This document shows, in pieces, positions 9,593-39,420 of a stretch of 64,000 nt of DNA; within the stretch, counting starts at the first letter, position 1, and every line of letters begins with the position of its first letter. The notes below the pieces were generated by a model. It searched no databases and was not told where the DNA came from. It saw nothing but the letters and a program-made list of their open reading frames with translations. This DNA is from Octopus bimaculoides. Taxonomy: Eukaryota. The position numbers and the translations under genes were made by a program. The stretch is from the NCBI RefSeq assembly GCF_001194135.2, contig NC_068988.1, positions 59,369,604 through 59,433,603 on the forward strand. The letters run 5' to 3'.

Positions 9593-11174
9593 TGAACACA
9601 TCTGCGCACCCGTTCAACCTGTTAGATTAATCTTCCACGTATTCTTCACGTCGCTATTCCTTTTTTCAAAAACGAAGGTTACATCGTATAATGTTAACCT
9701 ATATATTCCTTAAAAAATACGATTGTCACACATGGAATAATGCTTATTATAGTATTCTTTAGTTTGGGAAACAGCGATTGAGAAATAAAAAAAAAAAAGA
9801 TATTCATATACTTGGGGTATTAAAAAAAACATTCTATGAGATAATGCTCAGTTACCCACTTCACTGTAAAGTAATTCAAGACACCGTAAAGATCTTCTAA
9901 TTGGCATCTACTTCACTATATATATATTCAATAACAGAAACTGCCTAGTATTATACGTTTAAAACAAATAGAAGAGAAAAAGCGTAGGATAAGAATCAGA
10001 AGATTTAGGCGGAGGATCACACATATTGGCTGTTTTTTCAGAGAGGCGGTTGTGCTATTGCTTTCAAACAGCTGTGTGGTATCAAATGCGATTGGTGTGG
10101 AACGTGTAACGATCAGTAAACATTTATTATTATTCAGAAAGACTGTTTGATTTCTATTTTCCTTTCTTTCATATTTATTCCATCTTTCCTGTTTAGGTTA
10201 GTGTAATTGTTCATTGTAATTTTTTTTCTGCGAGAAGACATGCGTGTGTCTGAGTGTGTATAGTTTTCTGTACTTGAGTATGGATACATNNNNNNNNNNN
10301 NNNNNNNNNNNNNNNNNNNNNNNNNNNNNNNNNNNNNNNNNNNNNNNNNNNNNNNNNNNNNNNNNNNNNNNNNNNNNNNNNNNNNNNNNNNNNNNNNNNN
10401 NNNNNNNNNNNNNNNNNNNNNNNNNNNNNNNNNNNNNNNNNNNNNNNNNNNNNNNNNNNNNNNNNNNNNNNNNNNNNNNNNNNNNNNNNNNNNNNNNNNN
10501 NNNNNNNNNNNNNNNNNNNNNNNNNNNNNNNNNNNNNNNNNNNNNNNNNNNNNNNNNNNNNNNNNNNNNNNNNNNNNNNNNNNNNNNNNNNNNNNNNNNN
10601 NNNNNNNNNNNNNNNNNNNNNNNNNNNNNNNNNNNNNNNNNNNNNNNNNNNNNNNNNNNNNNNNNNNNNNNNNNNNNNNNNNNNNNNNNNNNNNNNNNNN
10701 NNNNNNNNNNNNNNNNNNNNNNNNNNNNNNNNNNNNNNNNNNNNNNNNNNNNNNNNNNNNNNNNNNNNNNNNNNNNNNNNNNNNNNNNNNNNNNNNNNNN
10801 NNNNNNNNNNNNNNNNNNNNNNNNNNNNNNNNNNNNNNNNNNNNNNNNNNNNNNNNNNNNNNNNNNNNNNNNNNNNNNNNNNNNNNNNNNNNNNNNNNNN
10901 NNNNNNNNNNNNNNNNNNNNNNNNNNNNNNNNNNNNNNNNNNNNNNNNNNNNNNNNNNNNNNNNNNNNNNNNNNNNNNNNNNNNNNNNNNNNNNNNNNNN
11001 NNNNNNNNNNNNNNNNNNNNNNNNNNNNNNNNNNNNNNNNNNNNNNNNNNNNNNNNNNNTTTATTCCAAAAGAAAAGAAAAGGGAGTATTATAAGAATAC
11101 ATACATATGCAAAATCTATGGGCTACGCAAATATATATTAGTAATACATAAAAGAGTAAATGATTAAAATATCA

Positions 11175-11602
11175 GTTCCATACGGCCGTTTCTGCCCAGA
11201 GGCCACGATATCCTACTTGCTATCTTCACTCTTTTCCGTAGGCTTTTCCTTCCACGGCTAAACCTAAACTGTCCTCCCCTCTTTTTACACGAGAACATTA
11301 CTGTGTGATACACGATCCCTATTGATCGGCCTTTCCTTTTCTTTTTTTTCGCTCCCTTTTGATCGAACTGCCCCTTTTCCCTTCCTACGATCCCTTTTGA
11401 TCGACACCACCAATTTTTTTTTTTTTCTTTTTTTTTTCCTTCCTTTCCCCCTTCCAAAAAGAAAAGCTCTACATTGTATTTGTCCCATCTTCGTTGAGCC
11501 CTGTGTGGCTAATAAAAGAAATGTATCTTCACTCTTCAGTGTTCTGTATTGATGGTTAGATAGAGTTTGGATGTTGAGTGTGCCTCTAGGCTTCATCAGC
11601 GG
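11175..11602 (-). ncRNA. Type I hammerhead ribozyme motif with ~380-nt loop II
   Basis: CTGATGA (11599-11593), extra A, stem II GCCTAGAGGC/GCCTCTGGGC (10 bp, one G-U), extra A, GAAAC-GGCC-GTA; stem I only CCG/TGG. Confidence 0.6.
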
Positions 11603-11861
11603 TTGTAAACGGTTAGGAGAGCCGATACATACAAGATTGAATTGCTAATATTCATGTTATTTTGTCCAGTGTATCTTGGAAGGCAACACTTGAAGTCTGT
11701 GACAAATTTCCCTTTCCTATACCTAATAAATTTTCCACACTATTTCTCCTCTCACACTCTAAGTCTTGCTATTATTCTTCTTATGTTCTCTTCATCAAGA
11801 AACCTTTACTGTTCCTGTTAGTAACTGACCATGTATGTATCGGCTCTCTTAACCATTTAGA

Positions 11862-11966
11862 CCCCCCGATGAAGCCTAGAGGCACACTCAACATCCAGAC
11901 TCTACAAAACACTGAAGCTAGCAAGGAGGATATCGTGGCCTCTTGGCAGAAACGGCCGTAAGGAAC
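11862..11966 (+). ncRNA. Type I hammerhead ribozyme motif, U4C variant
   Basis: CCGATGA-A-GCCTAGAGGC...(54 nt)...GCCTCTTGGC-A-GAAAC-GGCC-GTA; stem I weak. Confidence 0.55.
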
Positions 11967-13509
11967 TGATTTTTTAATCTTTTACTCTTTTATGTATTAC
12001 TAATATATATTTGTGTAGCACACAGTCTTTGCATATGTATGTATTCTTATAATATACCCTTTTCTATGGGAATAAATAGACATAATAGAATGTCTACTGG
12101 CTGATGTATGTCATTTTTGTATCCACTCCATTTTCTTTTTGCCGTATAAATTAAAGGTACACCACTATTTACCCCCGCCCATATATGACACTTGAATGCG
12201 AAATTGCCATGCAATAACCAGCACTTGGGTATTAATAATTGGGCACAGTACCAGCAGTATATTGGACAGGTGCTATCCCTTAGTTAGTTGGCTTCCCTTC
12301 TTCTAACTCTCACATAAATATATATATAGAATTAGAATAGAGGATGTATTAACCTCTTAAAGGGATGATTACATCCAAGAAACTACTGGTTCTTTACCTT
12401 ATATCTTTGGGAAATAAAATTTCCCTAATCGGTATGTATATATTAAGTATAAATTAAGAGGAGAAAATGGAGAAATGGTGGTTAATATTTTTTAAATAAT
12501 AAATTGATAATTTCAGTGGAAAAATTGATAATCATTTCTTCCTAAAACCTTTTCCATTTCTACTCATTGCATAAGTTACAAATTTGTGCATTAAATTTGC
12601 ATTTATAAGTTATTTACAGTTATTATAAATTATTTGCAGTTTATTCCCCGAAAGAGAAAATTTCAATATATATGCATCATTACTTCCTAAAATGTGCCTC
12701 TAAACGTATGCTACGTACCTGTCAAATCTATTCCTATGTGAATGTATAATTCACGAGAAATTCACCAAAGAAATAACAGCATTAGCATTACATTCATGCA
12801 TACTTACTAACGTAAATGCAGACACACATACACGTATACATACAAACACACAAACATATAAGTACGTAGTTAAAGTGAATCTTCACCACTTTACATGATG
12901 AAACTATACCTCACTATAATGAGTGTGTTTTTGCGTGTTCTTTCGTTTGGAGAATTAGAAGTCAAACCAGCCCTTAATGTATTTTAAATGTTAGAATACA
13001 TTCGACGATGTGTGCGTAGATATAAAGAAAGTGATAATGGTCGCGTGTGGAATGCTTTCTTTCATAGGACCGCTCGACTAGGATTGACTTTTGTCTAATC
13101 AATAATTAGGAATTCAAGTACACGCAAACGAACAAATCTCAACTATTTTACATTATTGTCTATTGCTTTTAATGACCAGTACTAGTTCGTTCTGTCTTGT
13201 CTGTATATAACTTTTTATCAGCCATGTCGGAGAAACTTTTACATAGAGACCACGTTTATATGATGAACATATAAAATAAGCCTAAATAACGTTAACTTTG
13301 GTGAAACAATACCTTATGTGTGCGTGTGCGTGTGTGAGTCTGTGAGTGCATGGGTGCGTATTTGCGTGTGTGTATGTGTGTATGTGTGATTATGTGTGTG
13401 TGAGTGTGTGTGAGTGCATGAGTGCGTATTTGCGTGTGTGCGCGTGTGTGTGAGTGTGTGTGTGTGTATGTGTGTATGAGTGATTGTGTGTGTGTGTGTT
13501 TTCTGACTA

Positions 13510-13708
13510 TGAGTGATTGTGTGTGTGTGTGTGTCTGTAGAGGTTTCATGGGTTGATATTCTTTCATTCGTTGAACTGTTTACCTCGAAATGACTGACCC
13601 TTCAGCAACCCTAATTTCATTTAGAACAATTGTCAACTTATTTTAAACGACCGTATCTTGCCGAAGCAGTGGAAGTTGTATACTCAGGTAATCTAGTCAG
13701 CACAAAAG

Positions 13709-13741
<33 letters not shown>

Positions 13742-13848
13742 CAAAATGAAATAAGTCGCTTCAGAAAATTCTGACTTGCAATGGCATGCATGCATTGATT
13801 ATAATGGAAATGGCTAGGTGCTATATTTCTACTCGCTGCGTAGTAGCG
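13510..13848 (+). repeat. Local duplication copy 2 (partner 9281-9592)
   Basis: As copy 1, with an expanded poly-A tract at 13708-13740. Confidence 0.9.
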
Positions 13849-15462
13849 TAGAATACGTATGGGACATTGAGGAAGACAAGGAAATTAATCACAATACGTC
13901 AGTATCAGTTAACGAAGTGATATTACAAAACTTTGAAGTCTTATACTGAATAATTCAAAATTGTTCTGACAGCGAAAAGAATTTGGTAGTTTTCTATGAG
14001 TGTGTTGTGTTTACCTTTATATATTTTGTAGGGAAATTTTCGGAAAAGTGAAAATATTATTTGATGTTGTTTGTGAATAATTTTCACATAACAGTGAACT
14101 GTTTACAAAGCATTCAGTGTTCTGAGACAAATTACCCATTGTGTTATAAATATACATGGGTTTCTTTGGTTATTGGTTCGTTTGTGTTAATGACATTGCT
14201 GCACTTGCTGACATAGCGATACTTCATTTTGTGGACCTTCTTTTAACGGTGGCTGCTTATCAAAGGGAAATGTTATAATTGTGGAAATTCTAGTATCTGA
14301 AGTCTATTTAAACAGCATACATCACCAAATGTTATACGAGTGGGAATGAAGGGCATTAAAACCTGGTTTGTCGATCAAAGGAAAAATAGAACCAAATGCA
14401 CGGCGTTTCTACCTTATCTAATTAATTGGAGGTGTCAGCTTCCACACGGTCAAATGAACATGTATCAGAAATCGTAAGACAAAAATAGATTAAGTAGACT
14501 GTGCCCAAAATAATGTATACGAGTAGGAACGCTGTGTGCATTATGACTGTCAGTTTTAAGTTTTAAGAAGCATGTGCTCTCCTACAAATGATTCATTAAA
14601 AAGTAGTATTCCTTAAGGGAGATAGATGGCACGTAAGCGTACATAAGTCAATGACACATAAATACGGAAAGAAGAAACAATAGTCTCATAAAGTAATAGA
14701 GAAAATGTGAAACAGCACATAGCAATCTCTTCGTCATTAAAATACGAGAAAGCATCAACCTAGGCGATCAGTCCACTACAATAATCAATGAAATAACTCT
14801 TTGATCAAAATTATTATATGGTAAACATAACAAAAGAATACAGTGGCTATTATGAACCTGTTGGAAGCCTGATGCACGAACTCCTCTGATCAACTTCCGT
14901 TCCAGTCACTTTTGGATGGTTATTGAGTTTGAAACAAAATTTACTTCAGGCAAATTTCCACCATCTATAGCCCAGCTACGAAGGAGCTCAGCATCCTCTA
15001 AATCACTATCTATCAGCTGCTTATAAACAACTGAGATGTCTTTTTATAAATCTTCCATCATATCCTGAGAGGTTACTCTACACTTGTCGTCACATATCTT
15101 CAAACTATACGATATTTAATTCGCTATCTGCGGGATCATCTTATAAATAAATATGTATATATTCGCCTATCATAACACTGAAAGGGGGAAATGTTTAGGT
15201 TGGCGCCTTTGTTGTGAACAACATCTCTTTGGTTTGTATTAAACTGTTAACCTTAAAATAGCAGACCTAGTAATAATATGTTATTGCAACCATATACTAC
15301 AGCAGCACACTATTATAATAACTTGATTAGCATGGGGCATACACTCGAAGCCAAATACACTGTTTCGCAGTCTACATGAAATTTGTGGTATTGATATTAT
15401 TTTCGTTGCTGTATCAATGTTTCTCACTTTTACTATCTCATCTTTACAATTTGACCAGTCAG

Positions 15463-15670
15463 TTTGTGATTATTACAGTTTATATCAAGCTATAAAAACC
15501 ATTGATGCTTGTAATGATTTTTCTGACATTATATTCAACTTTTACTATTACACTCGGTCAGATGTAAATGTTACGACAGAAATTTTTATCGCTTGTAATA
15601 TACACGGTGTGGCACCTAATTACGGTTTTAAACGTTGTAAGTTTAACTTTTACGGAGATCGACATTACCT
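15463..15670 (+). CDS. Candidate internal coding exon, Cys/Tyr-rich, unknown product
   Basis: Pyrimidine tract and CAG acceptor at 15460-15462, open frame VCDYYSLYQAIKTIDACNDF...IACNIHGVAPNYGFKRCKFNFYGDRHYL, GTGAGT donor at 15671. Confidence 0.4.
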
Positions 15671-17490
15671 GTGAGTTATTCAGTTACGAGGAAGTGAAAT
15701 ACTATGGTTTCCTGTAAAGAAAATGTGCTATTTATTTACAACCAATATGCTCTGCGATCAAACCCAACCGAATTCAACATAGTGTTTCCAGTTTCAAAAG
15801 TGGATAATATAATTCAACATATTAATATTGACATCATTGATTATGTCATTTATTAAAAATTGTGGCCTTCTGCCGGATGAGGGAAATCATTATTGCCTTT
15901 TATTTTAGATACACATACACTATAGTAAAATCTTTATCATTTCTAATGTAGTCCTTTTATGGAAATGACCGATTTCTAATAATAATTCCAGGATCGAAAC
16001 TATGAGGATTCACTATTTAGTGAGAAAACATTCTCACCAAACACGTATTCTAGAGTATTTACAAGTAATCGTTTTTTATTTTCCGAAAGCAGTCGATAAA
16101 CAAGTAAAAATATTGGTTGTCAATTCCTGTTTTATAATTTGGCAACCAATCGCAGTTATAAACTATCATTTTAACTATAGTATCAAACATTTGTGAAAGT
16201 AATAAACACTGTGTATCTTTTGCATTTATTTGTGAATATATGGTTATATTAATTCGTGTGTTTGTGTAGTTTTAGATCTTTCCTGAACGATCAAACCAAT
16301 TGAGCTTTATGGCCCATAAATGAAATAAACTATTCCAAATTTGAATCGGTTCCTAGTTCCTTGAGAAATTGGGGTTTTTGTACGATCCGTTCTATAAAGC
16401 GTTATAATTAAAACTACCAAATCCGTCAGATGGAGCATATTCTATTTAGTTAATGCTCCGTTTGACTCTATAACCTGACATCTTAGCAATTTACGCTCTC
16501 TTTTAATCTATAGGGTAGGTCCGTCACCTTGGTATATCTTATTTTTGTCTCCCATCATATCTTAGAACGTAACACTTTATGAACTTTGCGACTCTTTTCA
16601 TTAGTCCTTGATCTCTTTTCCTATTACTCATTATGTCTCTGATTATTTATTCGCTATCGATGTAATTTGAGAGATAGTTGATTTCTACTTCGAGGAAAGT
16701 ATGCAACATCACATTTTCTTTTAGAAAACGCATCTGTGAAATACTATCGAAATAATTCTGTAATATACATATATAATATAAACGGGTACAACTGGCAAAG
16801 TAACGTTCATACTTTGCATAACTTTAGAAGTTGGAGACAAAGCAGAAACATTGTAGACATCGAATCAAATATATTGCCCAAAACTATTAAGTGATCCCTG
16901 AAATGTGCAAAGAAGAAAAGCAACGTTCAATTAATGGGACTTGGATTTTGAATGGAAATGTCAGTGAAAATATATTGTGAAATATTTTGTCTCAATAAAC
17001 ATCGTATCTGTCAATCTGGCATTAATTGATGCATTTAGTAATTTATAAGATAATAAGTTCACTGATGAGTAGACATCCCTTTCAATCAAATCAAATAGTT
17101 TGAAAGTATGAACCTATAATAGGAATGAGAAATACATGATAAGAATATTTTACAGCTTCTACTTATTAGGAGAAAATGAATTTCATGAAGAATAATTCCA
17201 TAACATTTCACTATGAATGACAACGTAAATCATTTATTATGATTTGAAAGTAAAATTTCTCATTAAAATTAAAATGTCAACACTGATATATCTAGTGATT
17301 ATCAAAATTGTAATGTATAGCGGATAGTTCATCACGCTTCATTGGAAGGTGATAAGTAAGAATGATATATGGTGTATAAGTGCTACTGGGAGAAGCTGAT
17401 CTAAAAATTTACATATGCTAGAACGAACAGCCAACTTTATCTGAAACAACATATTTTTTATTAAACCATGTAGATATATTAGATTGTGTA

Positions 17491-18115
17491 TTTGGTTACC
17501 CCATAAATAATGCAGTTTTCTCAATTAGAGGGATGCGGGATACAATAACTGCATCAGCTTGCTATAAAAATAGATGGTAATTTTACTTTGTCCTCATTCT
17601 GAGTGCAAGTAAAAAAGAGTGCAGTTCGATTTTAACAGTTATTTTTTTCAAAGGTATAATGAAAGTGACAAAAAAAAGAAAACATATTCGGCATATTTTG
17701 CTTTATAGGTTGAATAAAATCAACAAAACAACGGAAATTGCGAAGAATATTCATGAAGTATATGGGGATCAAACAAAAAGCGTAATCCAGTGTCAAGGGT
17801 GGTTCCAGAAATTCCGGGCCGAAAACTACAGCCTAGGAAACGAGCCTTATCCTGGGATATCTGTAGAGCCCAACGGAAACGTCCGGCAAACACTGCTGGA
17901 AGAAACTCCCTTCGTAACTGTTGAGGAACAAGGAGAGTAGCTTGGATTTGGTCATTCAAACATTCATCAACACCTGTGTGTCATCAGAAAAATCAGAAAA
18001 TTAGGTCAATGGGTTCCTCACAAATTTTCAGAGTCTAATCGCCGCATAAAGTGAATGTGCTCTCATTGCTGTTAGGTCTCACGAATGAACTAGTTTTGGA
18101 CCGAATAGTGACTAT
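17491..18115 (+). mobile_element. Mariner transposon, 5' half, degenerate
   Basis: MKVTKKRKHIRHILLY...EIAKNIHEVYGD...QCQGWFQKFRAENYSL.NEPYPG, then LGQWVPHKF (WVPHxL motif) and LDRIVT; starts after TA at a TIR-like TTTGGTTACCCCATAAATAATGC. Confidence 0.9.
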
Positions 18116-18524
18116 TCGTCTGTATATTTAGAATAATACAACAAGCTAAAGAACTAAAATTTAAAACCATAGAGAACATTAATAGACTGTTGATTAACAG
18201 CCCAGTCAAGATGGTAAATTCTTCATCTCCTACTCTTGTATTTGCACACATTTACTAACTGACTTTCTGAAATGAATTTCCATTATGCAGCTGAGGAGTA
18301 CATTTTCATTGCACATCTTATGTGGTGTTCTCACTACATAAATAAATGGAGTTTGTACGAAATGTACGTACTGCTATAACCTAATACATTTTTGTTGTTT
18401 TTCTTCAAATTTTATTCACCAAATCTCTTGGTTTTGTTTTTGGTTTTTACCCTAGCAAATTCTGGTGCCACATACATTTTAAGTACCACACTTAATCTTT
18501 TGATTAAATCTGTATTATTATATT

Positions 18525-18617
<93 letters not shown>

Positions 18618-18653
18618 ATATATATATACCCATGCATACATACATAAGCATAC

Positions 18654-19150
18654 ATTACTATTTGTAAATCTCTCGACGAGGGGCATTCAGTACCAATACT
18701 CCAGAGTAAATATTTGCCAACATAATGCGGCAGTCCTGGTTAGGACGAATGCGACTGCTATTTGGCGCGAGGAAACATCTTCACCAGCTGGCTATGCGGC
18801 ACACTAGAGTACTGTTACTGAATGTCTCTCTCTGAGAGATGTACAAATAGTAATTTTCTATTGTATTAGATCAGTAACTGTGTGTCACTTTGAAAACTAC
18901 ATATTTCGAACGAGAATCTAGCAGCGCCACCTCTAGTCGGACAATTATTCTGTGCTGATGAAGAGAAAAACCCCGGAAATCGCGGTACACAGATATTGTT
19001 TTGTGCTGACTGGGCATGCTAAACTCCCTTGTTCGGAATTACATGGACATAGATAGTGTGTGGTATAGCCAGTTGGAGACGATGTTTCCGGGGACTAAAT
19101 AGCAGTAACATTCCTCCTAACCAGAAATGCCATGTTATGTTCGCAAATAA
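18654..19150. mobile_element. Nested inverted-repeat element around a hammerhead motif
   Basis: 18654-18707 pairs with 18803-18854; 18711-18795 is the reverse complement of 19064-19149; flanked by TA/GT microsatellites. Confidence 0.8.
18949..18993 (+). ncRNA. Type I hammerhead ribozyme motif, core intact
   Basis: TCTGTG-CTGATGA-A-GAG-aaaaac-CCC-G-GAAA-T-CGCG-G-TA-CACAGA: 6-bp stem I, palindromic CGCG loop III, GUA site; stem II has one A-C mismatch. Confidence 0.75.
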
Positions 19151-19317
19151 TCTTTACTATATATGTGTGTACGTGTGTATGTGTATGTAGTTGGAATTTA
19201 CAAAAACAAAAAATAAATAATAGATAAAAAATAACAAACAAACAAAACAAAAGACGAGGACGAGTGTGAAAACAACAAACAAATATATTACTTTAACGCT
19301 CGGGATGTGGGAAAGTA

Positions 19318-19353
19318 TTTTACGTTTCGAGCCTACGCTCTTAGACAGAAAGG
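19318..19353 (-). ncRNA. Minimal hammerhead-like relic, core mutated
   Basis: Minus strand TTT-CTGTCTA-A-GAGC-gtag-GCTC-GAAAC-GTA-AAA; A6 and G8 substituted. Confidence 0.45.
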
Positions 19354-19433
19354 AACATAGATATAAACAGAGAGAGAAAATAAAAAAAAGGTTTAGTGGC
19401 TAGCGATCAATCATGGCGTATGCATACATACAT

Positions 19434-19469
<36 letters not shown>

Positions 19470-21039
19470 TATAATTTGACTTCAAATGGTCACGCTTGCA
19501 ACGATTCGTTTATAGGTCTATTTTTTAACGTAGGTGACCCGATTCGAACTACTATGAGACAAAACAAAATTAGTGAGTGCAATTTAGTAGCTTCCATTGA
19601 AATATCTCGAAATACCTGTAACTAGTTGTAACGATCCGTCAACCTTATAACATATTCAATAGGTCACATGCGTCCATTCGGATCTGCTCGTCTGGATGTC
19701 CCTTTAAATCATTGCATTTGAACATTATACATATATANNNNNNNNNNNNNNNNNNNNNNNNNNNNNNNNNNNNNNNNNNNNNNNNTATATATATATATAT
19801 ATGTATATGTATGTATTTATGTTTGTATGAATCTGCACCTCCTTACATGATGGAACATTCTACATCACTATAATGAGTATGTTTATATATATAATGACTC
19901 TAAGATATTTTAAATCTTCTGACTTAACATAGTTCACCGCGTATCAAAATGAAAATATATTCCTCACCACACTAAAGCAGTAATATTTTCCTTTAGATAT
20001 AAAAGGATTCGTTTCATTAAGTTTGTTTGCAACCGGGTAGCTTTTGTTTTTGAACACTGATGCTTGACTTCATTTTAGAAACAAAACCTTATCGTCACCA
20101 GCTTGGGATCGAAAATAATATATTATCTTTTTAACATAATGATATCGCGTAATTATTTTCCTTTTTGAAATTGTATTCATATTTTCTTGAATAGTATTGT
20201 TAGATATATTTTTGTATCTCTTTTAAGTAGATAATATTTTTGTATTTCTTTTAAGTAGATACATTCAGTCATGGTTCCGACAACTTTACTAAATTGCAGA
20301 AGACTCTCAATTAGTAAGAGACCCATCTATATCAATTAAGAAGTATTATCTACGGACAATACGTGTTTTGTTAGATGGATATATGTGTACCTCCATATGC
20401 TTCGGTGCAATTCTTTCTGCCTCTGTATATCTTAAATGCTTTCTACAGTTATTCAATATCGATTCTATGCACATTTAGATGGAATGCATAAGCTATGATA
20501 ATCAAAGTTTTCATATTTTCTGATATATCCTTTCAAGAGAGATCAATTCTCTCTTCACATAAATAATGTTGTTATTCCATGAGCAAAGCGCCAACAATTA
20601 CAGTTACGAAGACAAGAAATTAGTCGATATCCTCCACTGCCGTACTACCTTTTATTCAAGCCATACGGATAAAAGGCAAAGTTGACGTCAGCGGTACTTG
20701 AACTTAGAATGTAAAGATCAGAAAACAAAGAGAAGCATATTTCTGTAAAACAATCGTTTTCATATTTATTCTTAATAATTAGGGTAGTAAAATAATTAGG
20801 CTTATAAATAAGAGTATGAATTCTGTAATAATTCGATGGCTGTGGTGTTGATGCAATCTGGGAAAATTTAGATATGAGCCTTCCGTTATGGTCAGACGTT
20901 AGCAAAAGCTTTGTACGGTTGTCTTTAAACCCAGCGGAACTATAATCAAACGCACCCCAACTCTCCTACAGCCATCTGAGGATTGAAATATCTAAATCAC
21001 AGAATGTTATCTTTTCAAAAGATTGTAGTGTAATTTGAG

Positions 21040-21330
21040 AGATATATAGCCCTTATTTCAAGCATGTAAGGGAAACACAAAATCTCTTTATATTGACTTA
21101 TGCCTATTATTAATTGCTAGATGATGATTATTATAAGATCAGCTCTGGGTAAACGGAGTTATGAAAAGGGGCGATCCAAATATATTCCTTGCAGCTTTTA
21201 TTCATTTCAAGAATACCATTTTTGCTTTCTTTATCAGAAATTTCACGAACTATTTAAAGCCGAGGTGGAATCTTATGACGACAATTTGGCCCTCACTTAT
21301 ATTGAGTCAATAAACTATCTTTAATTGTTG
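21040..21330 (+). pseudogene. Possible ancient Ty3/Gypsy RT relic
   Basis: Frameshifted pieces IDL / YAYY*LLDDD and FQEY...FHELFKAEVESYDDNL loosely follow the DL..AY.Q, FQ..M, Y.DD order. Confidence 0.3.
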
Positions 21331-22977
21331 CTGCTTAACCCTAGGTTATCCCTGAGGAAGCTATGATACCATGCATTCTTCCTTCTGATCTATGTGCATG
21401 AAGCTATATCTACTCCCTTTCATGACAAAGTGACCTTACATTGGAAATTGTGTTCCGTGTTAAATGGTTGGTGGAAAACCCTGTCTCTCTAAGGGAGTTA
21501 CTGATGTGGTGATCTTTTATATGCCAGACAAAATAGTTTATGATCATTTCAGTTAAATTTCAAAATTGATCTACACAATCGCCATATTCAACAACAACTG
21601 CAGATCATGTAATATGAATGTATTACATTTTAACAATATTTAGATTACAGCAGTGAATTATGTTCTTCCGTAACGCTCACAATGACTTCCTGAAAGGCAT
21701 CAAACAACCACGAATCGATCGTTTTGTATTTTGACATATAAACAGGAATATTTATGAATTAAAAGAATAGAAATGCAGGATAAAATGAAAAAAAAATTCA
21801 TTATCACTACTACAAATGTTATTACAAAAATAATGTATATAAAGTTCCCAGGATAAATGACCATGCGCAAGTATTATATTAATCTCATGGCTAGAAAGGG
21901 AACATGCAGCATCAGCCACAGATACAAAACAATCCACTGCTCCAAAGAGAATTTCGAAACACGAAACACATTAAGTACCAAGTGAAGTTCATAATGATAA
22001 ATACCACGATAATACTACAATAAAACTAAAGTGCCACCATTACAGGTAATATGTAGTTTCACCATCGAAACTATTCTGTAGAATGAACCACAGAAAAATA
22101 GCATACCACGTACCTCTAAGGAACTATATAATTAACGATACAACGAAACGTAATGTATAATCCTGAGTTTTGCATATAGGTTATTTTCATTTGACATTCC
22201 GAGAGGATTACTTCTCGCATACATAAAACATAAAACACTGTATTGAATTGTGAGCCGTTTTGATCAAACAAGAAGCTATGTATTACACCCCCCCACACAC
22301 ACACACGCACGCACACACAAACAAAGGAAACTATATATACATCTACAGAGAGAGACAAGGGAGGAAAGAGAGAGAGAGCGATGAACATAGTGGAGGTAGA
22401 GAAAAATAGATAGGTAGATAGAAAGATTATTATAAAAGTACATAGTTAGAGACAGATGGAATGGTAGCTACAGGGATATAAGTGTACATATGCTTGCATA
22501 CACAGATATACATACAGAAACACAACGACACATATTTAGAAATACATATATGTAGAGGTGTATACGCTGCATAGCTGCTGACGGTCAGTAATTCTGTGAG
22601 GAGGTTGCCTGTTTCATATTAACATGGACATTTAACGGCAATTTCACCGTGAGAGTGGGTGAGAAGACTGGAGAGGTGCCTTACATGTACAATATACACG
22701 ATAGATAATTACTATGCATTCACTCATGCTGGCGCATACACACACAAACAGACACACATACAGTCACACACACAATCACACACACATATAGATATGCATT
22801 GGTGAAAATGTGTTAGAGTTGCAAAAGTTTATGCCTGGTAACAAGTTCTCTAACCACATGATTACGAGTTAAGGCCCACTGTGTGTCTCTTTGGGAAAGT
22901 GTTTTCTTCTCTACTCTTGAATCGAGCAGGGTCAGTCGTCTGAGTTCATTTTGTGGATGGTTACTAAAAGAAACGCA

Positions 22978-23140
22978 TCCGAAACTGCAAAGACGATCTG
23001 CTCCTCGACTGATGATCAAAAGTTCCGAATGACCCGTCCTTGTTTTCTCATGTCCTTTTTTGTATCATCTACTGTCCGAATGTTTTGTTGTCACCTGTTA
23101 CATTCTTGATACATTTTGTGTTTTGATTTTTTATATATAA
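22978..23140 (+). repeat. Dispersed repeat copy (partner 24112-24280)
   Basis: CCGAAACTGCAAAG.CGATCTGCT.CT.GACTGATGAT...TTTTTTGTATCATCT.ACTGTCCG.ATGTTTT.TTGTCACCTGTTA shared. Confidence 0.85.
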
Positions 23141-23271
23141 ATATAGCGGCGTACGCCTAGGCGGGCTATTTAAGCTAGTCGTGTACATACGTGCATATAT
23201 ATATGTGTATACATCCGTATATGTAAGTATACTGTTTATATATACATATTTGTATTTATGTGCTTGAGTAT

Positions 23272-23331
23272 ATTCCACCGATGAAGGCAAAGCATTATTT
23301 ATGCAAAGCCAGAAATCTGGGATCTGGAATT
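23272..23331 (+). ncRNA. Type I hammerhead ribozyme motif, U4C variant
   Basis: ATTCCA-CCGATGA-A-GGC...GCC-A-GAAA-TC-tgg-GA-TC-TGGAAT: 6-bp stem I, 3-bp stem III, AUC site, inner GCAT/ATGC helix in stem II. Confidence 0.7.
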
Positions 23332-23499
23332 ATCTTGTTATTTTACTGGTTTATTTTGTCTTCGTCTTCGCTCCTTGTGCTATGTGGACATTTATTGTGG
23401 TTTAGAGTCAGGATTTGACTGCTATTTTTCAGGGTGGCGGTATCTCTTAGATACCCTGTATTATAATTTATANNNNNNNNNNNNNNNNNNNNNNNNNNN

Positions 23500-23540
<41 letters not shown>

Positions 23541-24059
23541 AAATATATATATACATATATATATATATAAATTCTGTACGACTCTTACCCTTTCATTTAG
23601 CCACTTTCACAGTTTCTTCGTTCTTTCCACTTTTCTTTTTCTCGCTCCCACGTTCTCTCATATTTCTTGGCATTCCCTTCATTCTCATCACTTTCTCTCC
23701 TCCTCTACTTCACTCTGTTCCTTTCCTTGTGTCTTTCTTTCTCGTCTCTCCCCAGTTTTTTAATCCCTCTGCTCACTACCCCCTCCTCTCCTTGCACGTG
23801 ACTGGTGTTCGGCCAAGCCTGACTTTTCTTTCTTGGTTCGACAATCATCCTTGTAGCGTCTCTTGTATTTCTTCGCATGACTTTCATCCAGTATGTTTCT
23901 GCCCTAAGGCTTCACTTCCACACACACCATCTTAATTTAATTCATCCTGTTGTTAATCTCTGTCCTGTTGCTTCTATTTATAATTGTGTACCATTTCTCC
24001 GTTTTTTCGTCTTTGTTTTCCTATACATTCTCTTGCTTTCTTCCAAAGAATCTAGTACT

Positions 24060-24280
24060 TTTGGCTTAGATTTTCTTGGGGCCGGCCAGATTAGAGCAGT
24101 CACGAGATTAACCGGCCGAAACTGCAAAGGCGATCTGCTTCTTGACTGATGATTGAAAGCTCCGAATTACAAGTCCTTGTGTTTTGTTGTCCTTTTTTTT
24201 GTATCATCTGACTGTCCGGATGTTTTCTTGTCACCTGTTATGTTTTGTTCCATTTTTTTTGTTTTGATTATATATGTATA
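24060..24280 (+). repeat. Dispersed repeat copy (partner 22978-23140)
   Basis: See 22978-23140. Confidence 0.85.
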
Positions 24281-25158
24281 TATTTTATGTATTGACATCG
24301 ATAATAATAACAATATTGATATCTATATAAATATTCTATTCTGAATATTTTTGCTGATGACTAGTACTGTTCACATTGAGACTGTCCACATTTTGCCGCT
24401 AAGCATCTACGGACGCCAGCAGATTTTAAAACTGCGGACTTTTTCTAAGGATTAAGATGTGCTGAGAAAGGTAAGAAATTTGTATCGAATGAGAAGCCGG
24501 TCCACATATATATCTGTTCCATTGAATATATAGATTTGTACTATATAGGTATGAGAGATCTTTTTTGGTTCGCTTGCCAGTAAACTGTTGTATCTGTTGT
24601 TTTCAGTGTAATTGTTTTTGGTGCAAATGAGAGTCCTAACTCTTGTTTCTGGCGGATAGACATTTCGTTGTGATCTTGATTAATATAATTCTAATTTTAT
24701 AGGTATGTAACGCTGATTTATGCCTGCAAATGCATATATCAATATTGTTGTTATTATGCACTATTACTATTGAATTCAATAATAATAACAATATTAATGT
24801 CTATATAAATATTTTATTCTGAATAGTTTTGCTGCTGATATNNNNNNNNNNNNNNNNNNNNNNNNNNNNNNNNNNNNNNNNNNNNNNNNNNNNNNNNNNN
24901 NNNNNNNNNNNNNNNNNNNNNNNNNNNNNNNNNNNNNNNNNNNNNNNNNNNNNNNNNNNNNNNNNNNNNNNNNNNNNNNNNNNNNNNNNNNNNNNNNNNN
25001 NNNNNNNNNNNNNNNNNNNNNNNNNNNNNNNNNNNNNNNNNNNNNNNNNNNNNNNNNNNNNNNNNNNNNNNNNNNNNNNNNNNNNNNNNNNNNNNNNNNN
25101 NNNNNNNNNNNNNNNNNNNNNNNNNNNNNNNNNNNNNNNNNNTATATACATATATATG

Positions 25159-25209
<51 letters not shown>

Positions 25210-26065
25210 GTATGTATATATATACTGGAAAAAATTGCACTGATTGACACTTGCATGTAAGTATACACATACGAAATCACTCACTCTTTGTCTATCTCTA
25301 TCTCTACAAATAGCATCCCGTGTAACATAATTCCAGCATTCAAACATATACATAGATATTCAAAGCAAACAATAATATGTTCGAACACGTTTCAGCTTAA
25401 ATACGCATAGTTATGAAAAGAAACTTTTCCTTATCTTCGGTTTTTGTTCATTCAGTCTTTAACGAGTGGTCTGATTTGGTATTGTCACGTAAAGCTATTT
25501 CTGATTATTCCCATTATTCACTGGAGATTTGCTTTCGGCATGTACATTAGTATTAAGAATGACTTTTTTTGAATCTCATTTTTTTTTCAAATCTAATTTA
25601 AGTCACTAAATCACAATTCAAATCTTTGAAATTTCTTCTTTGACATGGTATGTATAACTATTTACTATTTTATATTTTTTTATGCAAGCAAAAAGCAATA
25701 CATAGACATTACAAAACCCTTGCTCAAATAGTTATAATGGACATATTTATTTTGAAAGCAGCAACATCAGCAGTAGTATTAGGGAGTTTTTCTGCCCCTT
25801 TTGCTATTTTGATATCAAAAATATTTATGCTGCTGTTGATAGTTTATATATAACATCAACATATCACATGTCATCAGAAGCTGAATATTGTCATTTTCAA
25901 GTCCATCACGAAATTTTGTGGTTATTCATAATTTACAGTCAGAATTTAAATGTGTTACATTAAATGATGACATTTAACCAGGGAATGATGGACGGGTATT
26001 TAGTCTAACATCGACAATGGAATAGAAGACGAAACAGGACTTCGATAAGGTGTGAATGCATAGAG

Positions 26066-26096
<31 letters not shown>

Positions 26097-26375
26097 NNNN
26101 NNNNNNNNNNNNNNNNNNNNNNNNNNNNNNNNNNNNNNNNNNNNNNNNNNNNNNNNNNNNNNNNNNNNNNNNNNNNNNNNNNNNNNNNNNNNNNNNNNNN
26201 NNNNNNNNNNNNNNNNNGGGGGGGGGTGTATGTGTGTGTGTGTGTGTGTGTTTGTGTGGGTGTATTGTGTGCGTGTGTGTGTCTGTGTTTGTGTGTATGT
26301 GTGTGTTTTAAATAAGATGAGACAACAAAACCAAGGTTGTGTGAAGTTTTCAGGACGTTTATAAAGAGAAAGTTT

Positions 26376-26423
26376 GTCTAACAGCAGTTTCTGGGATATT
26401 AGGGATATCCCTTCATCAGAGAC
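26376..26423 (-). ncRNA. Type I hammerhead ribozyme, fully intact
   Basis: GTCT-CTGATGA-A-GGGATAT-cccta-ATATCCC-A-GAAAC-TGCT-GTT-AGAC: 4-bp stem I, perfect 7-bp stem II, GUU site. Confidence 0.85.
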
Positions 26424-27169
26424 GATGAGTGATGTTTAAATAGAAGGAAATACTAGAGTTCAGTACAGGAGTTATTGTGGAAAAGGAAGCAAATAAAGAG
26501 TATATATGGAAATAGGAGAATGAATGTAGACATAAAAATTAAAATGTATAAAGATGTTATAGTTGCAGTTACATTATTCAAGGAAAGTGGTGTGTAGAAA
26601 TGGTATAAATGCTTCCTATCCGTGGTATGTAAATTCCAATAGGGGTTTATATTTTGTCATCACAGATGGAACCGTGGAGACATACATTCCATGTGCTGTT
26701 CATACAAAAGGGTCTTGTGGTGTGAATAAAAATGTGAGACCGTAGTGATAGTATTAAGTGGATAGAGATGGGAGAAGAGATGTGTATGTTAAAATGTAGA
26801 GAGGTCAAAGGGAAAATGAGAAAAGAAGTAAAGAAAGAGCAAGCGAAAAGGAAAACAAGTAGAGAAAAGGAAAAAAAGTGTTAAAAAAGATAAAATATGA
26901 AGACGGTGTATTAGTTGGTGGCCAAGATTTTAAGAGGGGTGATGGGGAGGAGTATGGTAAGAGTAGGAAAAAAATAAGAATGTAAATAATAAATATGTAT
27001 GAGGTGTATGATATGTTAGAATGGCATTAAGGTTTGGGTACGGCAAAATGTATAGGAGGAGTTTTTTTTAAAGTGAGTAGTAAAGCACAAAACGAAAGGG
27101 CAGAATGCTAAGAACGATCAAGTTTCTATAAATAGACTTATGTAATAGTGTCGGTAGAAGAATCAGGGA

Positions 27170-27360
27170 AAGAGAGAAGTGTATATTGATATACGGACAT
27201 ACGCACGTACATATATGTGTGTGTCTACGCATTATGATGTAGGCATGCGTACTTGTGTATCTAAACACGGACGCATGGATGCATATATATACACATACAT
27301 ATACACGTTCAGACATATACAGAAATACGCAATGTATGCACGCACAAGAACACAACTGTT

Positions 27361-27444
<84 letters not shown>

Positions 27445-27540
27445 AATATAGATACCCATAAATGCATACACGTGCGCACATATAAACTCGTATTTGTACA
27501 CGTATACACACTTACACGCACACAAGCACACAACCTTGCG

Positions 27541-27628
<88 letters not shown>

Positions 27629-27690
27629 CACATACGCACATACATCCTCATACATACGCCTATGTATGCCCATATGTGTAGTATTAAACA
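27170..27690. repeat. (CA)n/(TA)n compound microsatellite block inside the PLE
   Basis: Direct reading. Confidence 0.9.
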
Positions 27691-34019: not shown

Positions 34020-34589
34020 CATTGCCTAGCAATGCAAAACACAGTAAAAACATGAGATACGAAAACGAATGAGTTCAATACGCAAACAACGAGAGAAACA
34101 AATGGAAAACAGGATAAGCAACATAAAGAACGACCCTTCATCAGTTGTCTTCTGGCTATTTTTGTACTCCTCATTTCGAGCACTGAACGACAAAATGAAA
34201 CTTCGAAGACAGTTGCTTCCATAATTACCAAAATATAATTTTGGATTTATGGAAGGTCAAATTTGGTAACAAAAACAGGACAGAGGAGATATATAAGGAA
34301 ACCGACCGAAAACAAACATGGATGGTTGTAGGAACCAGAACGAAGGTAAAATAGCGACCGCTGGAGAACTATATTCTTTGACAAGAAAAAAAGATAGAAG
34401 AGAGAGACAGGATACGCCCAGTCTTTAGGATAGCCCTGAAAGAAAAGAAAAATGACCACGAAAGGAAAATAAAGATGAACGATGGTCACGTGTGAGCAAC
34501 AAAAGAGAGTAAAGGAGAAAGAGGAAGAGAGAGACAGAGAGAGAGAGTGAGAGAGAGAGTGAGAGAGAGAAAGAGATAGATAGATAGAT

Positions 34590-39199: not shown

Positions 39200-39420
39200 A
39201 CCTGCGGTATGTCTAACGATCCTCCATGTTTCTTGTCGTTCGGTTTTCTTGTATGTCTCCACTGTGCTGTTTTTGTTACCAACTTTTACCCTGCATAAAT
39301 CCCAAATATTATGTTGGCTTTTGTGGGAGCAACTACCTTCTAAGACTCATATTGTTATTCAATGCGTATATTCAACTCATTTGGTTTCGTATTTCATGTT
39401 GTTTACTGTTTGTTTTGTGA
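39200..39420 (+). mobile_element. Internally deleted copy C of the 34-35 kb element family
   Basis: CTCCATGTT...TTCGGTTTTCTTGTATGTCTC and GGGAGCAACT...TCATATTGT match copy B, then jump to GCGTAT..AACTCATT.G.TTTCGTAT.TCATGTT. Confidence 0.75.

What the first reader, a model, noticed from the sequence alone, without database searches (positions are those of the whole stretch)
11170..26423. One variant hammerhead architecture shared by several unrelated non-coding elements: candidate PLE-dependent retrozyme-like system
Seen: five motifs in four sequence-unrelated contexts (11.2-11.6k minus, 11.9k plus, 18.95k plus, 23.3k plus, 26.4k minus). All read CUGAUGA (or CCGAUGA) + extra A, stem II, an extra A/G, then GAAA, a short stem III and an NUH site; stems pair although their sequences differ completely. 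Known: Penelope-like elements carry type I hammerheads, often with short stem III and palindromic loops thought to cleave as dimers, and an extra A between A9 and G10.1 is known from a viroid hammerhead. Inference: the symmetric A.A/A.G pair at the base of stem II is a lineage-level HHR variant, and the ORF-less carriers are non-autonomous elements mobilised by PLEs such as the one at 26.3-28.9k.
Basis: partly seen in the sequence, partly recalled or inferred. Interest (0 to 1): 0.85.

Follow-up and report, generated by a model that had tools for sequence, protein, structure and literature searches.

The report
Penelope-type hammerhead ribozyme relics
Five (probably six) small hammerhead-ribozyme motifs of the kind carried by Penelope-like retrotransposons sit on short, decayed, protein-less insertions next to microsatellites. 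This is a known kind of element whose only unusual feature is a purine-purine mismatch at the base of helix II.

Summary
The motifs are real and occur far more often than chance. A compact type-I hammerhead descriptor finds 2 sites against 0.03 expected, and a descriptor without helix II finds 2 against 0.09. All five read C(U/C)GAUGA-A-[helix II]-A/G-GAAA-[self-complementary helix III]-UH.

They are not all intact. Two have C at core position 4. The 18.95k copy has a broken helix II. The 11.x pair has only a 2-3 bp helix I, and its helix II encloses 52 or about 380 nt. I found a sixth motif at 18287-18374, with a canonical core.

The architecture is that of the published 'minimal' hammerheads of Penelope-like elements (PLEs): an extra nucleotide after A9, a helix III that forms only in a dimer, mostly solo copies or opposite-strand pairs. 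Only the extra 3' purine is unusual. In 81 loci of Hydra-clade PLEs the same position is U.U in 29 of 72 motifs and never purine.purine.

The supposed PLE at 26.3-28.9k is a 5'-truncated, stop-riddled C-terminal remnant (linker plus GIY-YIG) of a Hydra-clade PLE. It has no reverse transcriptase, and there is none elsewhere in the window. One carrier (18.65-19.15k) is a circularly permuted, ORF-less unit of about 352 nt, which is retrozyme-like. PLE-dependent retrozymes are already published. Interest is modest.

The parts
11178..11602 (-). Hammerhead motif of the long left copy. It reads CUGAUGA-A-GCCUAGAGGC[about 380-nt insert]GCCUCUGGGC-A-GAAA-CGGCCG-UA|. Helix I is only 3 bp.
   Evidence: Helix II is 10/10 bp. 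Helix III ACGGCCGU is a perfect palindrome with dimer dG -14.1.
11864..11963 (+). Hammerhead motif of the short right copy. It has the same architecture with CCGAUGA (C at position 4), a 52-nt helix II insert and one U.U in helix II. Helix I is 2 bp.
11060..12082 (.). Head-to-head inverted pair of one ORF-less element. The left copy is 11633->11060 on the minus strand and is cut by the gap at 11059. The right copy is 11832->about 12082 on the plus strand. A spacer of about 200 nt lies between the two 5' ends. The right copy lacks 325 nt between TGAAG microhomologies.
   Evidence: Self-blastn (90.4-90.6% identity) and the alignment. The 3' half resembles the hammerhead region of a Hydra-clade PLE locus, L085 (score 39 against a shuffle maximum of 28).
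18287..18374 (+). Sixth motif, not in the finding. It reads GCAG-CUGAGGA-GUACA[51 nt]UGUAC-GAAA-UGUACG-UA|CUGC, with a canonical core and no extra purines. It lies about 135 nt upstream of a (TA)n array.
   Evidence: The loose descriptor expects 0.49 hits per window, so this motif is likely real but not certain.
18949..18993 (+). Decayed hammerhead. It reads UCUGUG-CUGAUGA-A-GAGAAAAACCCC-G-GAAA-UCGCGG-UA|CACAGA. Helix I is 6 bp, helix II is broken, and helix III is self-complementary.
18654..19152 (.). Retrozyme-like carrier. The right copy is A'(18801-18866)-C(with the hammerhead)-B'(19054-19149). The left copy, read on the minus strand, is B' followed directly by A'. Together they show a circular permutation of an ORF-less unit of about 352 nt, arranged head-to-head. 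Microsatellites lie on both sides.
   Evidence: The copies are 79-81% identical.
23272..23330 (+). Compact type-I hammerhead. It reads AUUCCA-CCGAUGA-A-GGC AAA GCAU UAUUU AUGC AAA GCC-A-GAAA-UCUGGGAUC|UGGAAU, with C at position 4. Helix I is 6 bp.
23264..23472 (+). ORF-less carrier of about 210 nt, lying between a TA/TG-rich tract and the assembly gap plus (TA)35.
26376..26423 (-). The best-preserved hammerhead. It reads GUCU-CUGAUGA-A-GGGAUAU CCCUA AUAUCCC-A-GAAA-CUGCUGUU|AGAC. Helix II is 7 bp. Helix III is one change away from the palindrome ACAGCUGU, which is common in Hydra-clade PLE hammerheads.
26306..27185 (-). ORF-less, pyrimidine-rich carrier of the 26.4k hammerhead. It lies between a compound microsatellite (27190-27690) and (GT)41 (26226-26306).
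   Evidence: It has no PLE protein similarity.
27908..28748 (-). 5'-truncated, stop- and frameshift-riddled remnant of a Hydra-clade PLE ORF. It corresponds to aa ~490-765 of about 806: the post-RT region, the CxCX5C linker (CKCRPEIFC) and the GIY-YIG domain. The RT core is absent.
   Evidence: Relatives carry the RWK, DKT and YRDDG motifs and a telomerase-like RT fold.

Best explanation
The motifs are relics of the minimal, dimer-dependent type-I hammerhead ribozymes that Penelope-like retroelements (PLEs) and their ORF-less parasites carry in their terminal (pLTR) regions. Each sits on a short non-coding insertion that was copied into a (TA)n/(TG)n microsatellite.

Inferred life cycle, taken from published work on PLEs and retrozymes. 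A tandem or multimeric transcript brings two hammerheads together, and their palindromic helix III segments pair to form the active double hammerhead. Cleavage after the NUH triplet releases unit-length RNA, which may be circularised. A PLE reverse transcriptase with its GIY-YIG nickase, supplied in trans from elsewhere in the genome, then copies that RNA into nicked microsatellite DNA. This produces 5'-truncated, more-than-unit and head-to-head inverted copies.

At this locus every copy is solo or inverted, so none can pair with a partner in cis. The copies are 10-21% diverged and several carry disabling changes, so they are most likely dead. The A.A or A.G pair at the base of helix II is a local version of a non-Watson-Crick 10.1/11.1 pair that is U.U in many Hydra-clade PLE hammerheads.

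Shown here: the motif architecture, its enrichment over chance, the insertion anatomy, and the PLE remnant. Inferred: cleavage, dimerisation, circularisation and mobilisation in trans.
For: Enrichment over shuffles. The core, helices and NUH triplets read directly from the sequence. No monomer helix III forms, but stable self-duplexes do: -14.1, -8.9, -6.8 and -6.2 kcal/mol.

Head-to-head inverted pairs at 11.x and 18.x. A permuted 352-nt unit at 18.x. Eight of nine determinable element ends abut dinucleotide microsatellites.

A Hydra-clade PLE C-terminal remnant lies in the same region. Its relatives have a TERT-like RT fold, and they form tandem units of 2.4-2.9 kb with a hammerhead at each junction. 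The 3' half of the 11.x hammerhead and its downstream flank resemble the hammerhead region of Hydra-clade locus L085.

The literature matches. An extra nucleotide after A9, a long helix II, a short helix I, a palindromic helix III, solo copies and opposite-strand pairs 100-700 bp apart are described in PMC4209133. Inverted 5'-truncated copies and (TA)n targets are described in PMC8557442. A U.U at the base of helix II in an axolotl retrozyme hammerhead (HHR_Amex2) is described in PMC7229834.
Against: No hammerhead family of Rfam matches, even at E<=10 or in 80-125-nt windows. However, Rfam also misses the canonical hammerheads of 12 Hydra-PLE loci, so this result is uninformative.

Two motifs have C4, one lacks helix II, and the 11.x pair lacks a real helix I. 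No direct tandem of any carrier is present, so no copy here could act as a dimer. Only one carrier has a PLE coding remnant nearby. That remnant lies about 1.4-1.5 kb upstream of the hammerhead, whereas Hydra-clade units have the hammerhead 100-550 nt after the ORF match. No other copies from the same genome could be retrieved, so no family consensus exists.
Confidence: 0.8

Rival explanations
1. The carriers are not dedicated non-autonomous families. They are simply the 3' or pLTR ends of severely 5'-truncated autonomous PLEs (solo pLTRs), as proposed for most dispersed minimal hammerheads.
For: PMC4209133 states that most motifs are single and probably belong to truncated PLEs. The 23.3k carrier is only about 210 nt. 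The 11.x 3' half resembles the hammerhead region of a PLE. A truncated PLE ORF lies upstream of the 26.4k motif in the same orientation.
Against: The 18.x carrier is a permuted 352-nt unit, far shorter than any PLE. The 770 nt upstream of the 26.4k hammerhead have no PLE protein similarity, although Hydra-clade units place the ORF end 100-550 nt before the hammerhead. Both 11.x copies start at the same 5' position.
Confidence: 0.35
2. The A.A/A.G pair marks a functional, lineage-specific hammerhead variant used by several active retrozyme families in this genome.
For: All five copies in four unrelated contexts carry it. It is absent from 81 hammerhead motifs in 309 kb of Hydra-PLE loci, where the position is U.U, G-C or A-U. 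A non-canonical pair at this position occurs in an axolotl retrozyme hammerhead (PMC7229834).
Against: Only four families were seen, all decayed. The one canonical-core motif at 18287 shows that the genome is not uniform. The accessible literature could not be searched exhaustively, because Lunse et al. 2017 is not held.
Confidence: 0.3
3. The motifs are SECIS-like or kink-turn-like elements (an AUGA...GA quartet closing a helix), not ribozymes.
For: There is a weak SECIS_1 match at 26376-26423(-), 12.9 bits. All five have AUGA-A...R-GA. Some PLEs (Naiads) carry SECIS elements (PMC8557442).
Against: The score is far below the gathering score of 35. No SECIS match was found for 23.3k or 11.9k. 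SECIS does not explain C3, the full GAAA, the palindromic segment, the UH triplet or helix I. The apical AAR motif is not at the right distance. The PLE remnant is Hydra-type and shows no selenoprotein signature.
Confidence: 0.03
4. The motifs are chance matches to a degenerate descriptor.
For: Loose descriptors do give background: 0.49 and 1.08 hits per window. The hit at 48994(-) looks spurious.
Against: Compact and no-helix-II descriptors are 20- to 60-fold enriched. Shared extra purines, palindromic helix III segments, microsatellite flanks and inverted or permuted repeat structures are independent of the descriptor.
Confidence: 0.02

Closest known systems
Minimal hammerhead ribozymes of metazoan Penelope-like elements (Cervera & De la Pena 2014, PMC4209133; Lunse et al. 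2017, not readable here)
   Same: Type-I topology. An extra nucleotide between A9 and helix II. Helix II longer than usual and helix I short. Helix III very short or palindromic, so it can form only in a dimer. High sequence diversity between families. Mostly solo copies, or pairs on opposite strands a few hundred bp apart.
   Different: There is an additional unpaired purine between helix II and G12, so the bulged A gets an A or G partner. One family has 52 or about 380 nt inside helix II. Two copies have C at position 4.
Hydra-clade PLEs and their hammerheads (Craig et al. 2021, PMC8557442; 81 loci surveyed here)
   Same: [quoted passage not shown] 29 of 72 Hydra-clade hammerheads have a symmetric non-Watson-Crick pair (U.U) at the same place. 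Helix III of the 26.4k motif is one change from their ACAGCUGU. The 11.x 3' half resembles locus L085.
   Different: Hydra-clade hammerheads have a 4-5 bp helix III and U.U, G-C or A-U at the base of helix II, never purine.purine. They lie 100-550 nt after an intact ORF in 2.4-2.9 kb tandem units. Here there is no RT, no tandem and no intact ORF.
Metazoan non-LTR retrozymes (Cervera & de la Pena 2020, PMC7229834; Li et al. 2026 bioRxiv 10.64898/2026.07.22.740005)
   Same: ORF-less units of a few hundred nt carrying one type-I hammerhead. Proposed dependence on PLE machinery. The 18.x carrier shows a permuted unit of about 352 nt, as expected from a circular or tandem template. A mismatch at the base of helix II is known from HHR_Amex2.
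   Different: Retrozymes are defined by direct tandem arrays and canonical hammerheads with loop-loop contacts. Here the copies are solo or inverted, the hammerheads are of the minimal type, and no RNA data exist.
CChMVd (+) viroid hammerhead with extra A10 (De la Pena & Flores 2001; cited in PMC4209133; details from my own knowledge)
   Same: It has an extra A between A9 and G10.1.
   Different: In the viroid the A is a single bulge in a type-III hammerhead of an RNA replicon. Here it faces a second purine in type-I motifs of retroelements.

Membership tests
Hammerhead ribozyme, type I | Conserved core boxes C3-U4-G5-A6-N7-G8-A9 and G12-A13-A14 | tested here: met
   All five have GAUGA and GAAA. 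Three have CUGAUGA. Two (11864, 23272) have C at position 4.
Hammerhead ribozyme, type I | Three helices around the core, with helices II and III closed and helix I open | tested here: inconclusive
   Met for 23272-23330 and 26376-26423. Helix II is broken at 18949-18993. Helix I is only 2-3 bp in both 11.x copies.
Hammerhead ribozyme, type I | NUH triplet at the cleavage site | tested here: met
   GUA, GUA, GUA, AUC and GUU.
Hammerhead ribozyme, type I | G10.1-C11.1 pair directly next to A9 and G12 | tested here: not met
   One unpaired nucleotide lies on each side: A...A in four copies and A...G in one. A G-C pair follows as the next pair in four of five.
Hammerhead ribozyme, type I | Match to a curated hammerhead covariance model | tested here: not met
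   No Rfam hammerhead hit. The control also failed on canonical PLE hammerheads, so this carries little weight.
Hammerhead ribozyme, type I | Site-specific self-cleavage | not testable with these tools
   This needs transcription and cleavage assays.
PLE minimal hammerhead (Cervera & De la Pena 2014) | Extra nucleotide between A9 and 10.1 | tested here: met
   An A in all five copies.
PLE minimal hammerhead (Cervera & De la Pena 2014) | Helix III absent or tiny and palindromic, able to form only between two copies | tested here: met
   Monomer dG is 0 for all. Dimer duplexes are -14.1, -8.9, -6.8 and -1.9 kcal/mol.
PLE minimal hammerhead (Cervera & De la Pena 2014) | Location in the terminal repeat of an element encoding RT plus GIY-YIG | tested here: inconclusive
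   There is only one PLE coding remnant (27908-28748), 1.4-1.5 kb upstream of the 26.4k motif. None lies near the other carriers.
Metazoan non-LTR retrozyme | Direct tandem repeats of 150-450 bp, each with a type-I hammerhead | tested here: not met
   No direct tandem of any carrier was found. The 18.x locus shows a permuted unit of about 352 nt, which implies a tandem or circular template but is not itself an array.
Metazoan non-LTR retrozyme | No protein-coding capacity | tested here: met
   There are no long ORFs and no PLE or RT similarity in the carriers.
Metazoan non-LTR retrozyme | Expression as small circular RNAs | not testable with these tools
   No transcriptome data are available. 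Unit folds are unremarkable (z -2.0 and -1.4).
Hydra-clade Penelope-like element (for the remnant at 27.9-28.7k) | C-terminal GIY-YIG preceded by a CxCX5C linker | tested here: met
   CKCRPEIFC followed by VIY...YIGST. Pfam GIY-YIG scores E 8.6e-4, below the cutoff. phmmer gives 39 hits, including the C-termini of 491-806 aa proteins.
Hydra-clade Penelope-like element (for the remnant at 27.9-28.7k) | Telomerase-like RT with RWK and DKT motifs | tested here: not met
   These are absent from the window, so the copy is 5'-truncated. They are present in relatives, whose model matches TERT structures best (E 3e-9).
Hydra-clade Penelope-like element (for the remnant at 27.9-28.7k) | Insertion into (TA)n-type microsatellites | tested here: met
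   It is flanked by (TG)33 at 28926-28991 and by compound AT/AC arrays at 27190-27690.
SECIS element | AUGA/GA quartet plus an apical AAR at the set distance, scoring above the model threshold | tested here: not met
   12.9 bits against a gathering score of 35 for one motif only. No hit for the others.

The most novel reading that the evidence does not exclude
A purine.purine pair (A.A or A.G) inserted between the A9.G12 sheared pair and helix II may be a functional, genome-specific hammerhead core variant. It would be shared by several unrelated PLE-parasitic families. One of them would have its whole cargo of about 380 nt inside helix II, so that the ribozyme forms only when the full element RNA folds. 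This would extend the tandem G.A motif of domain 2 into a four-pair non-canonical stack like a SECIS or kink-turn quartet. It would also show that the 10.1/11.1 position tolerates U.U, A.A and A.G in nature.
Probability: 0.3. Interest if true: 0.5.

Novelty: new variant of a known kind. Interest (0 to 1): 0.3.

Why it matters
If the A.A/A.G pair proves to be the consensus state and compatible with cleavage, it adds a natural variant next to the A9/G10.1 metal-binding site of the best-studied small ribozyme. It would join the U.U state, which the survey here shows to be very common in Hydra-clade PLE hammerheads. Descriptor and covariance-model searches that require G10.1-C11.1 next to the core would then be missing many eukaryotic hammerheads; Rfam found none here, nor in the control loci. 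Otherwise the locus is an ordinary graveyard of PLE-related insertions and adds little to the published picture of PLEs and retrozymes.

Tried and rejected
- Rfam scans at gathering score and at E<=10, on 20 kb and on 80-125-nt windows, gave no hammerhead. The many mir-297-type hits are microsatellite artefacts. A control on 12 PLE loci showed that Rfam is blind to these hammerheads.
- MFE folding of motifs and units gave z-scores of -0.2 to -2.0 for the five motifs and two units, and -3.4 for the sixth motif, so it is not decisive.
- The first word-indexed protein search with the stop-masked GIY-YIG remnant found nothing. The exhaustive phmmer search then worked.
- Exact-protein look-ups of three window ORFs found no contig, so the organism was not identified. 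A literature search for the SRA run numbers led nowhere.
- A search for an RT box (Y/F-x-DD) in six frames found none.
- tblastn of 158 Hydra-type proteins found only the one remnant.
- Carriers compared with all fetched loci by blastn gave no hit. Only a sensitive local alignment linked 11.x to L085.
- An apparent match of 12068-12105 to the start of a PLE ORF was not better than shuffles and was dropped.
- The recurrent CTGATGAAG at 34144(-), 35343(+) and 55131(+) belongs to another repeat family with no GAAA box or helices, so it is not a hammerhead.
- A profile search of A1 against PDB sequences gave no hit. The fold search did.
- Lunse et al. 2017 could not be read, so prior description of the 3' purine cannot be excluded.

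Full report
WHAT IS THERE. The window is AT-rich (about 33% GC), full of (TA)n/(TG)n microsatellites and assembly gaps, and has no long ORFs. I take it to be a transposon-rich stretch of an invertebrate genome; that is an inference, and the organism was not identified. Reading the five places named in the finding and fixing exact coordinates gives these motifs:
- 11178-11602(-): CUGAUGA-A-GCCUAGAGGC[about 380 nt]GCCUCUGGGC-A-GAAA-CGGCCG-UA|
- 11864-11963(+): CCGAUGA-A-GCCUAGAGGC[52 nt]GCCUCUUGGC-A-GAAA-CGGCCG-UA|
- 18949-18993(+): UCUGUG-CUGAUGA-A-GAGAAAAACCCC-G-GAAA-UCGCGG-UA|CACAGA
- 23272-23330(+): AUUCCA-CCGAUGA-A-GGC..GCC-A-GAAA-UCUGGGAUC|UGGAAU
- 26376-26423(-): GUCU-CUGAUGA-A-GGGAUAU-CCCUA-AUAUCCC-A-GAAA-CUGCUGUU|AGAC

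So the shared reading (core, extra A, helix II, extra A or G, GAAA, short helix III, NUH) is correct for all five.

IS IT MORE THAN CHANCE? Rfam finds no hammerhead at its gathering score, at E<=10, or in 80-125-nt windows. This is uninformative, because Rfam also finds nothing in 12 PLE loci that carry textbook-looking hammerheads. I therefore wrote descriptors and compared them with dinucleotide shuffles.
- A compact type-I descriptor allowing 0 or 1 free nucleotide on each side of helix II finds 2 sites (23278 and 26419) against 0.03 expected. Both are in the 1+1 state.
- A descriptor that ignores helix II finds 18955 and 23278 against 0.093 expected.
- A long-range helix II descriptor recovers both 11.x copies with 10/10 and 9/10 bp helices placed exactly 1 nt from both boxes. 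The background for that loose test is about 1 hit.
- The looser form of the first (type-I) descriptor also found a sixth motif at 18287-18374(+), with a canonical core (CUGAGGA, G10.1-C11.1, no extra purines) and a self-complementary helix III. Given a background of 0.49 it is likely real but not certain.
- A hit at 48994(-) looks spurious.

Helix II of the 18.95k motif does not pair; it is one G-to-A change from GGG/CCC. Helix I of the 11.x copies is only 2-3 bp. Two copies have C at the conserved U4. In the 11.x family the two halves of the core are 76 or about 400 nt apart.

THE CARRIERS. Self-comparison shows that the four contexts are unrelated to each other.

The 11.x copies are a head-to-head inverted pair, 90.4-90.6% identical, with both 5' ends at the same position and about 200 nt between them. 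The right copy lacks 325 nt that lie inside helix II of the left copy, between two TGAAG microhomologies. That segment holds three CGAUCAAAAGGGAUCG hairpin motifs and purine runs.

The 18.65-19.15k locus is also head-to-head. The right copy reads A'-C(hammerhead)-B'. The left copy, read on the minus strand, reads B' followed directly by A'. That is a circular permutation, so the template was a tandem or circular ORF-less unit of about 352 nt. The copies are 79-81% identical.

The 23.3k carrier is about 210 nt and the 26.4k carrier about 875 nt. Eight of the nine element ends that can be determined abut dinucleotide microsatellites, which cover roughly 8% of the region.

None of the helix III segments folds alone, but they form self-duplexes of -14.1, -8.9, -6.8, -6.2 and -1.9 kcal/mol.

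THE 'PLE' AT 26.3-28.9k. No Y/F-x-DD RT box with open context exists anywhere in the window. The only coding trace is on the minus strand at 27908-28748. It is a 77-residue stop-free piece with C-K-C-RPEIF-C followed by VIY...YIGST...FKQRY, with a weak Pfam GIY-YIG match (E 8.6e-4, below the cutoff).

An exhaustive phmmer search gave 39 hits. They include a 58%-identical fragment from a Logan contig (P0001, run SRR11869384) and the C-termini of 491-806 aa proteins. Those proteins and 960 relatives carry RWK, DKT, YRDDG, CxCX5C and CxLCxxEK motifs. Craig et al. 2021 (PMC8557442) give the RWK, DKT and CxCX5C motifs, together with units under 3 kb, hammerheads and (TA)n targets, as marks of the 'Hydra' clade of C-terminal-endonuclease PLEs. 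An AlphaFold model of P0008 (pLDDT 78.9) matches telomerase reverse transcriptases best (E 3e-9), as expected for a PLE.

tblastn places the window copy at residues ~490-765 of 806, in three pieces with frame changes and stops. No other fragment of this protein family lies anywhere in the window. It is therefore a dead, 5'-truncated copy without RT.

The 26.4k hammerhead lies about 1.4-1.5 kb downstream of it, beyond a 500-nt microsatellite and 770 nt with no PLE similarity. In Hydra-clade units the hammerhead follows the ORF match by about 100-550 nt. Whether the two belong together is open.

HOW UNUSUAL IS THE ARCHITECTURE? [quoted passage not shown] That covers everything in the finding except the 3' purine.

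To see what PLE hammerheads do at that position, I fetched 80 metagenomic loci of Hydra-clade PLEs plus several others. Many are 2.4-2.9 kb tandem units with a hammerhead at each junction; L087, for example, has an exact 2400-nt period. Of 72 plus-strand motifs in 57 of 81 loci:
- 39 have no extra nucleotide;
- 29 have U...U flanking helix II;
- 3 have only a 5' A (the classical minimal type);
- 1 has only a 5' U;
- none has purine...purine.

The same holds on both strands of all 309 kb. A U.U mismatch at the base of helix II is also reported for the axolotl retrozyme hammerhead HHR_Amex2 (PMC7229834).

The locus closest to the window's PLE family for which a hammerhead could be read (L085, 44% protein identity to P0008) has a U...U hammerhead. 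Its 3' half and downstream flank align with the 11.x element (GAAACGNCCGUAAGGAA...UUUAAUC; score 39 against a shuffle maximum of 28).

So a symmetric non-Watson-Crick pair at 10.1/11.1 is a common natural state. The A.A/A.G version seen in all four families here is a local flavour that I did not find elsewhere. I could not read Lunse et al. 2017, so earlier description cannot be excluded.

MECHANISM. The best-supported reading is that these are relics of PLE-type insertions. In life, multimeric transcripts let two hammerheads pair through helix III and cleave after the NUH triplet. Unit RNA, perhaps circularised, is then copied by a PLE RT/GIY-YIG enzyme supplied in trans into nicked microsatellites. 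This gives 5'-truncated, more-than-unit and inverted copies. This follows PMC4209133, PMC7229834, PMC8557442 and PMC11167929; the last reports that hammerhead cleavage is protein-assisted and not needed for insertion in vitro.

The anatomy is shown here. Cleavage, dimerisation and mobilisation are inferred. At this locus no copy has a partner in direct orientation, and several carry core or helix defects, so present-day activity is unlikely.

Whether the carriers are dedicated non-autonomous families or truncated ends of autonomous elements can be judged only for 18.x (a 352-nt permuted unit, so non-autonomous). There is weaker evidence for 26.4k and 11.x. The idea itself is published (PMC7229834; bioRxiv 10.64898/2026.07.22.740005).

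RIVALS. Chance is rejected. A SECIS or kink-turn reading was suggested by a 12.9-bit SECIS_1 match at 26376-26423. It reflects the AUGA/GA tandem sheared pairs that hammerhead domain 2 shares with SECIS. It fails the threshold of 35, is absent from the other motifs, and does not explain C3, GAAA, the palindrome, the UH triplet or helix I.

ASSEMBLY GAPS. None interrupts a motif or a reading frame. All lie in or beside microsatellites. They limit only the 3' ends of three carriers.

VERDICT. The one feature of note is the purine.purine pair at the base of helix II, plus a family with its cargo inside helix II. Both remain untested for function.

Noticed in passing
window 18287-18374 (+): A sixth hammerhead-like motif with a canonical core (CUGAGGA, G10.1-C11.1, no extra purines). 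It has a 51-nt hairpin insert in helix II and a self-complementary helix III, AUGUACGU. It lies about 135 nt upstream of a (TA)n array. The fold z-score is -3.4.
   Followed up: partly
window 11236-11560 (inside helix II of the left 11.x copy): A 325-nt segment absent from the right copy. It holds three copies of the hairpin motif CGATCAAAAGGGATCG separated by purine-rich runs and a long A-run. It is bounded by AGAGTGAAGATA/TGAAG repeats. It could be a deletion by microhomology in the right copy, or an insertion with a target duplication in the left copy.
   Followed up: partly
L004-L089 (metagenome and genome loci of Hydra-clade PLEs): About 40% of the hammerheads at unit junctions (29 of 72) have an invariant U...U flanking helix II. 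Several contigs are perfect tandem arrays, for example L087 with a 2400-nt period. Rfam detects none of these hammerheads.
   Followed up: partly
L026 2177 (+), L036 2464 (-), window 11864 and 23278: C instead of U at hammerhead core position 4 (CCGANGA) recurs in otherwise well-formed motifs from unrelated sources. It may be a tolerated variant, or simply frequent decay at a CpG-creating site.
   Followed up: no
window 34144 (-), 35343 (+), 55131 (+); repeats 34121-34546 / 34943-35364 / 39223-39365: Another non-coding repeat family keeps the string CTGATGAAG but has no GAAA box or helices. It is not a hammerhead.
   Followed up: partly
window 22979-23139 and 24116-24280: An 82.5%-identical direct repeat of about 160 nt ending in a T-rich/TA tract (SINE-like), just upstream of the 23.3k carrier. 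A second duplication at 24296-24357 / 24766-24842 runs into the gap at 24842.
   Followed up: no
window 17581-17937 (+) and 45537-45881 (-): Two other transposon fragments: a Mos1/mariner HTH_48 domain (E 4.9e-14) and the C-terminus of an SF1 helicase of the kind found in Helitron/Pif1-type elements (E 5.6e-6).
   Followed up: partly
window 26376-26423 (-): A weak SECIS_1 match (12.9 bits). With the extra A.A pair, hammerhead domain 2 (U7.A14, G8.A13, A9.G12, A.A) mimics a SECIS or kink-turn quartet.
   Followed up: partly
L002 2580-2607: The Logan contig that carries the closest full-length PLE (P0008, run SRR11869389) ends in a loxP sequence (ATAACTTCGTATAATGTATG). This is a mate-pair library adaptor, so the contig end is artificial.
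   Followed up: no
window 18583-18668, 23176-23267, 25137-25225, 27186-27684, 29433-29605: Numerous sub-threshold Rfam 'mir-297 / mir-466 / mir-3149 / mir-1277' matches are TA/TG microsatellite hairpins, not miRNA genes.
   Followed up: yes
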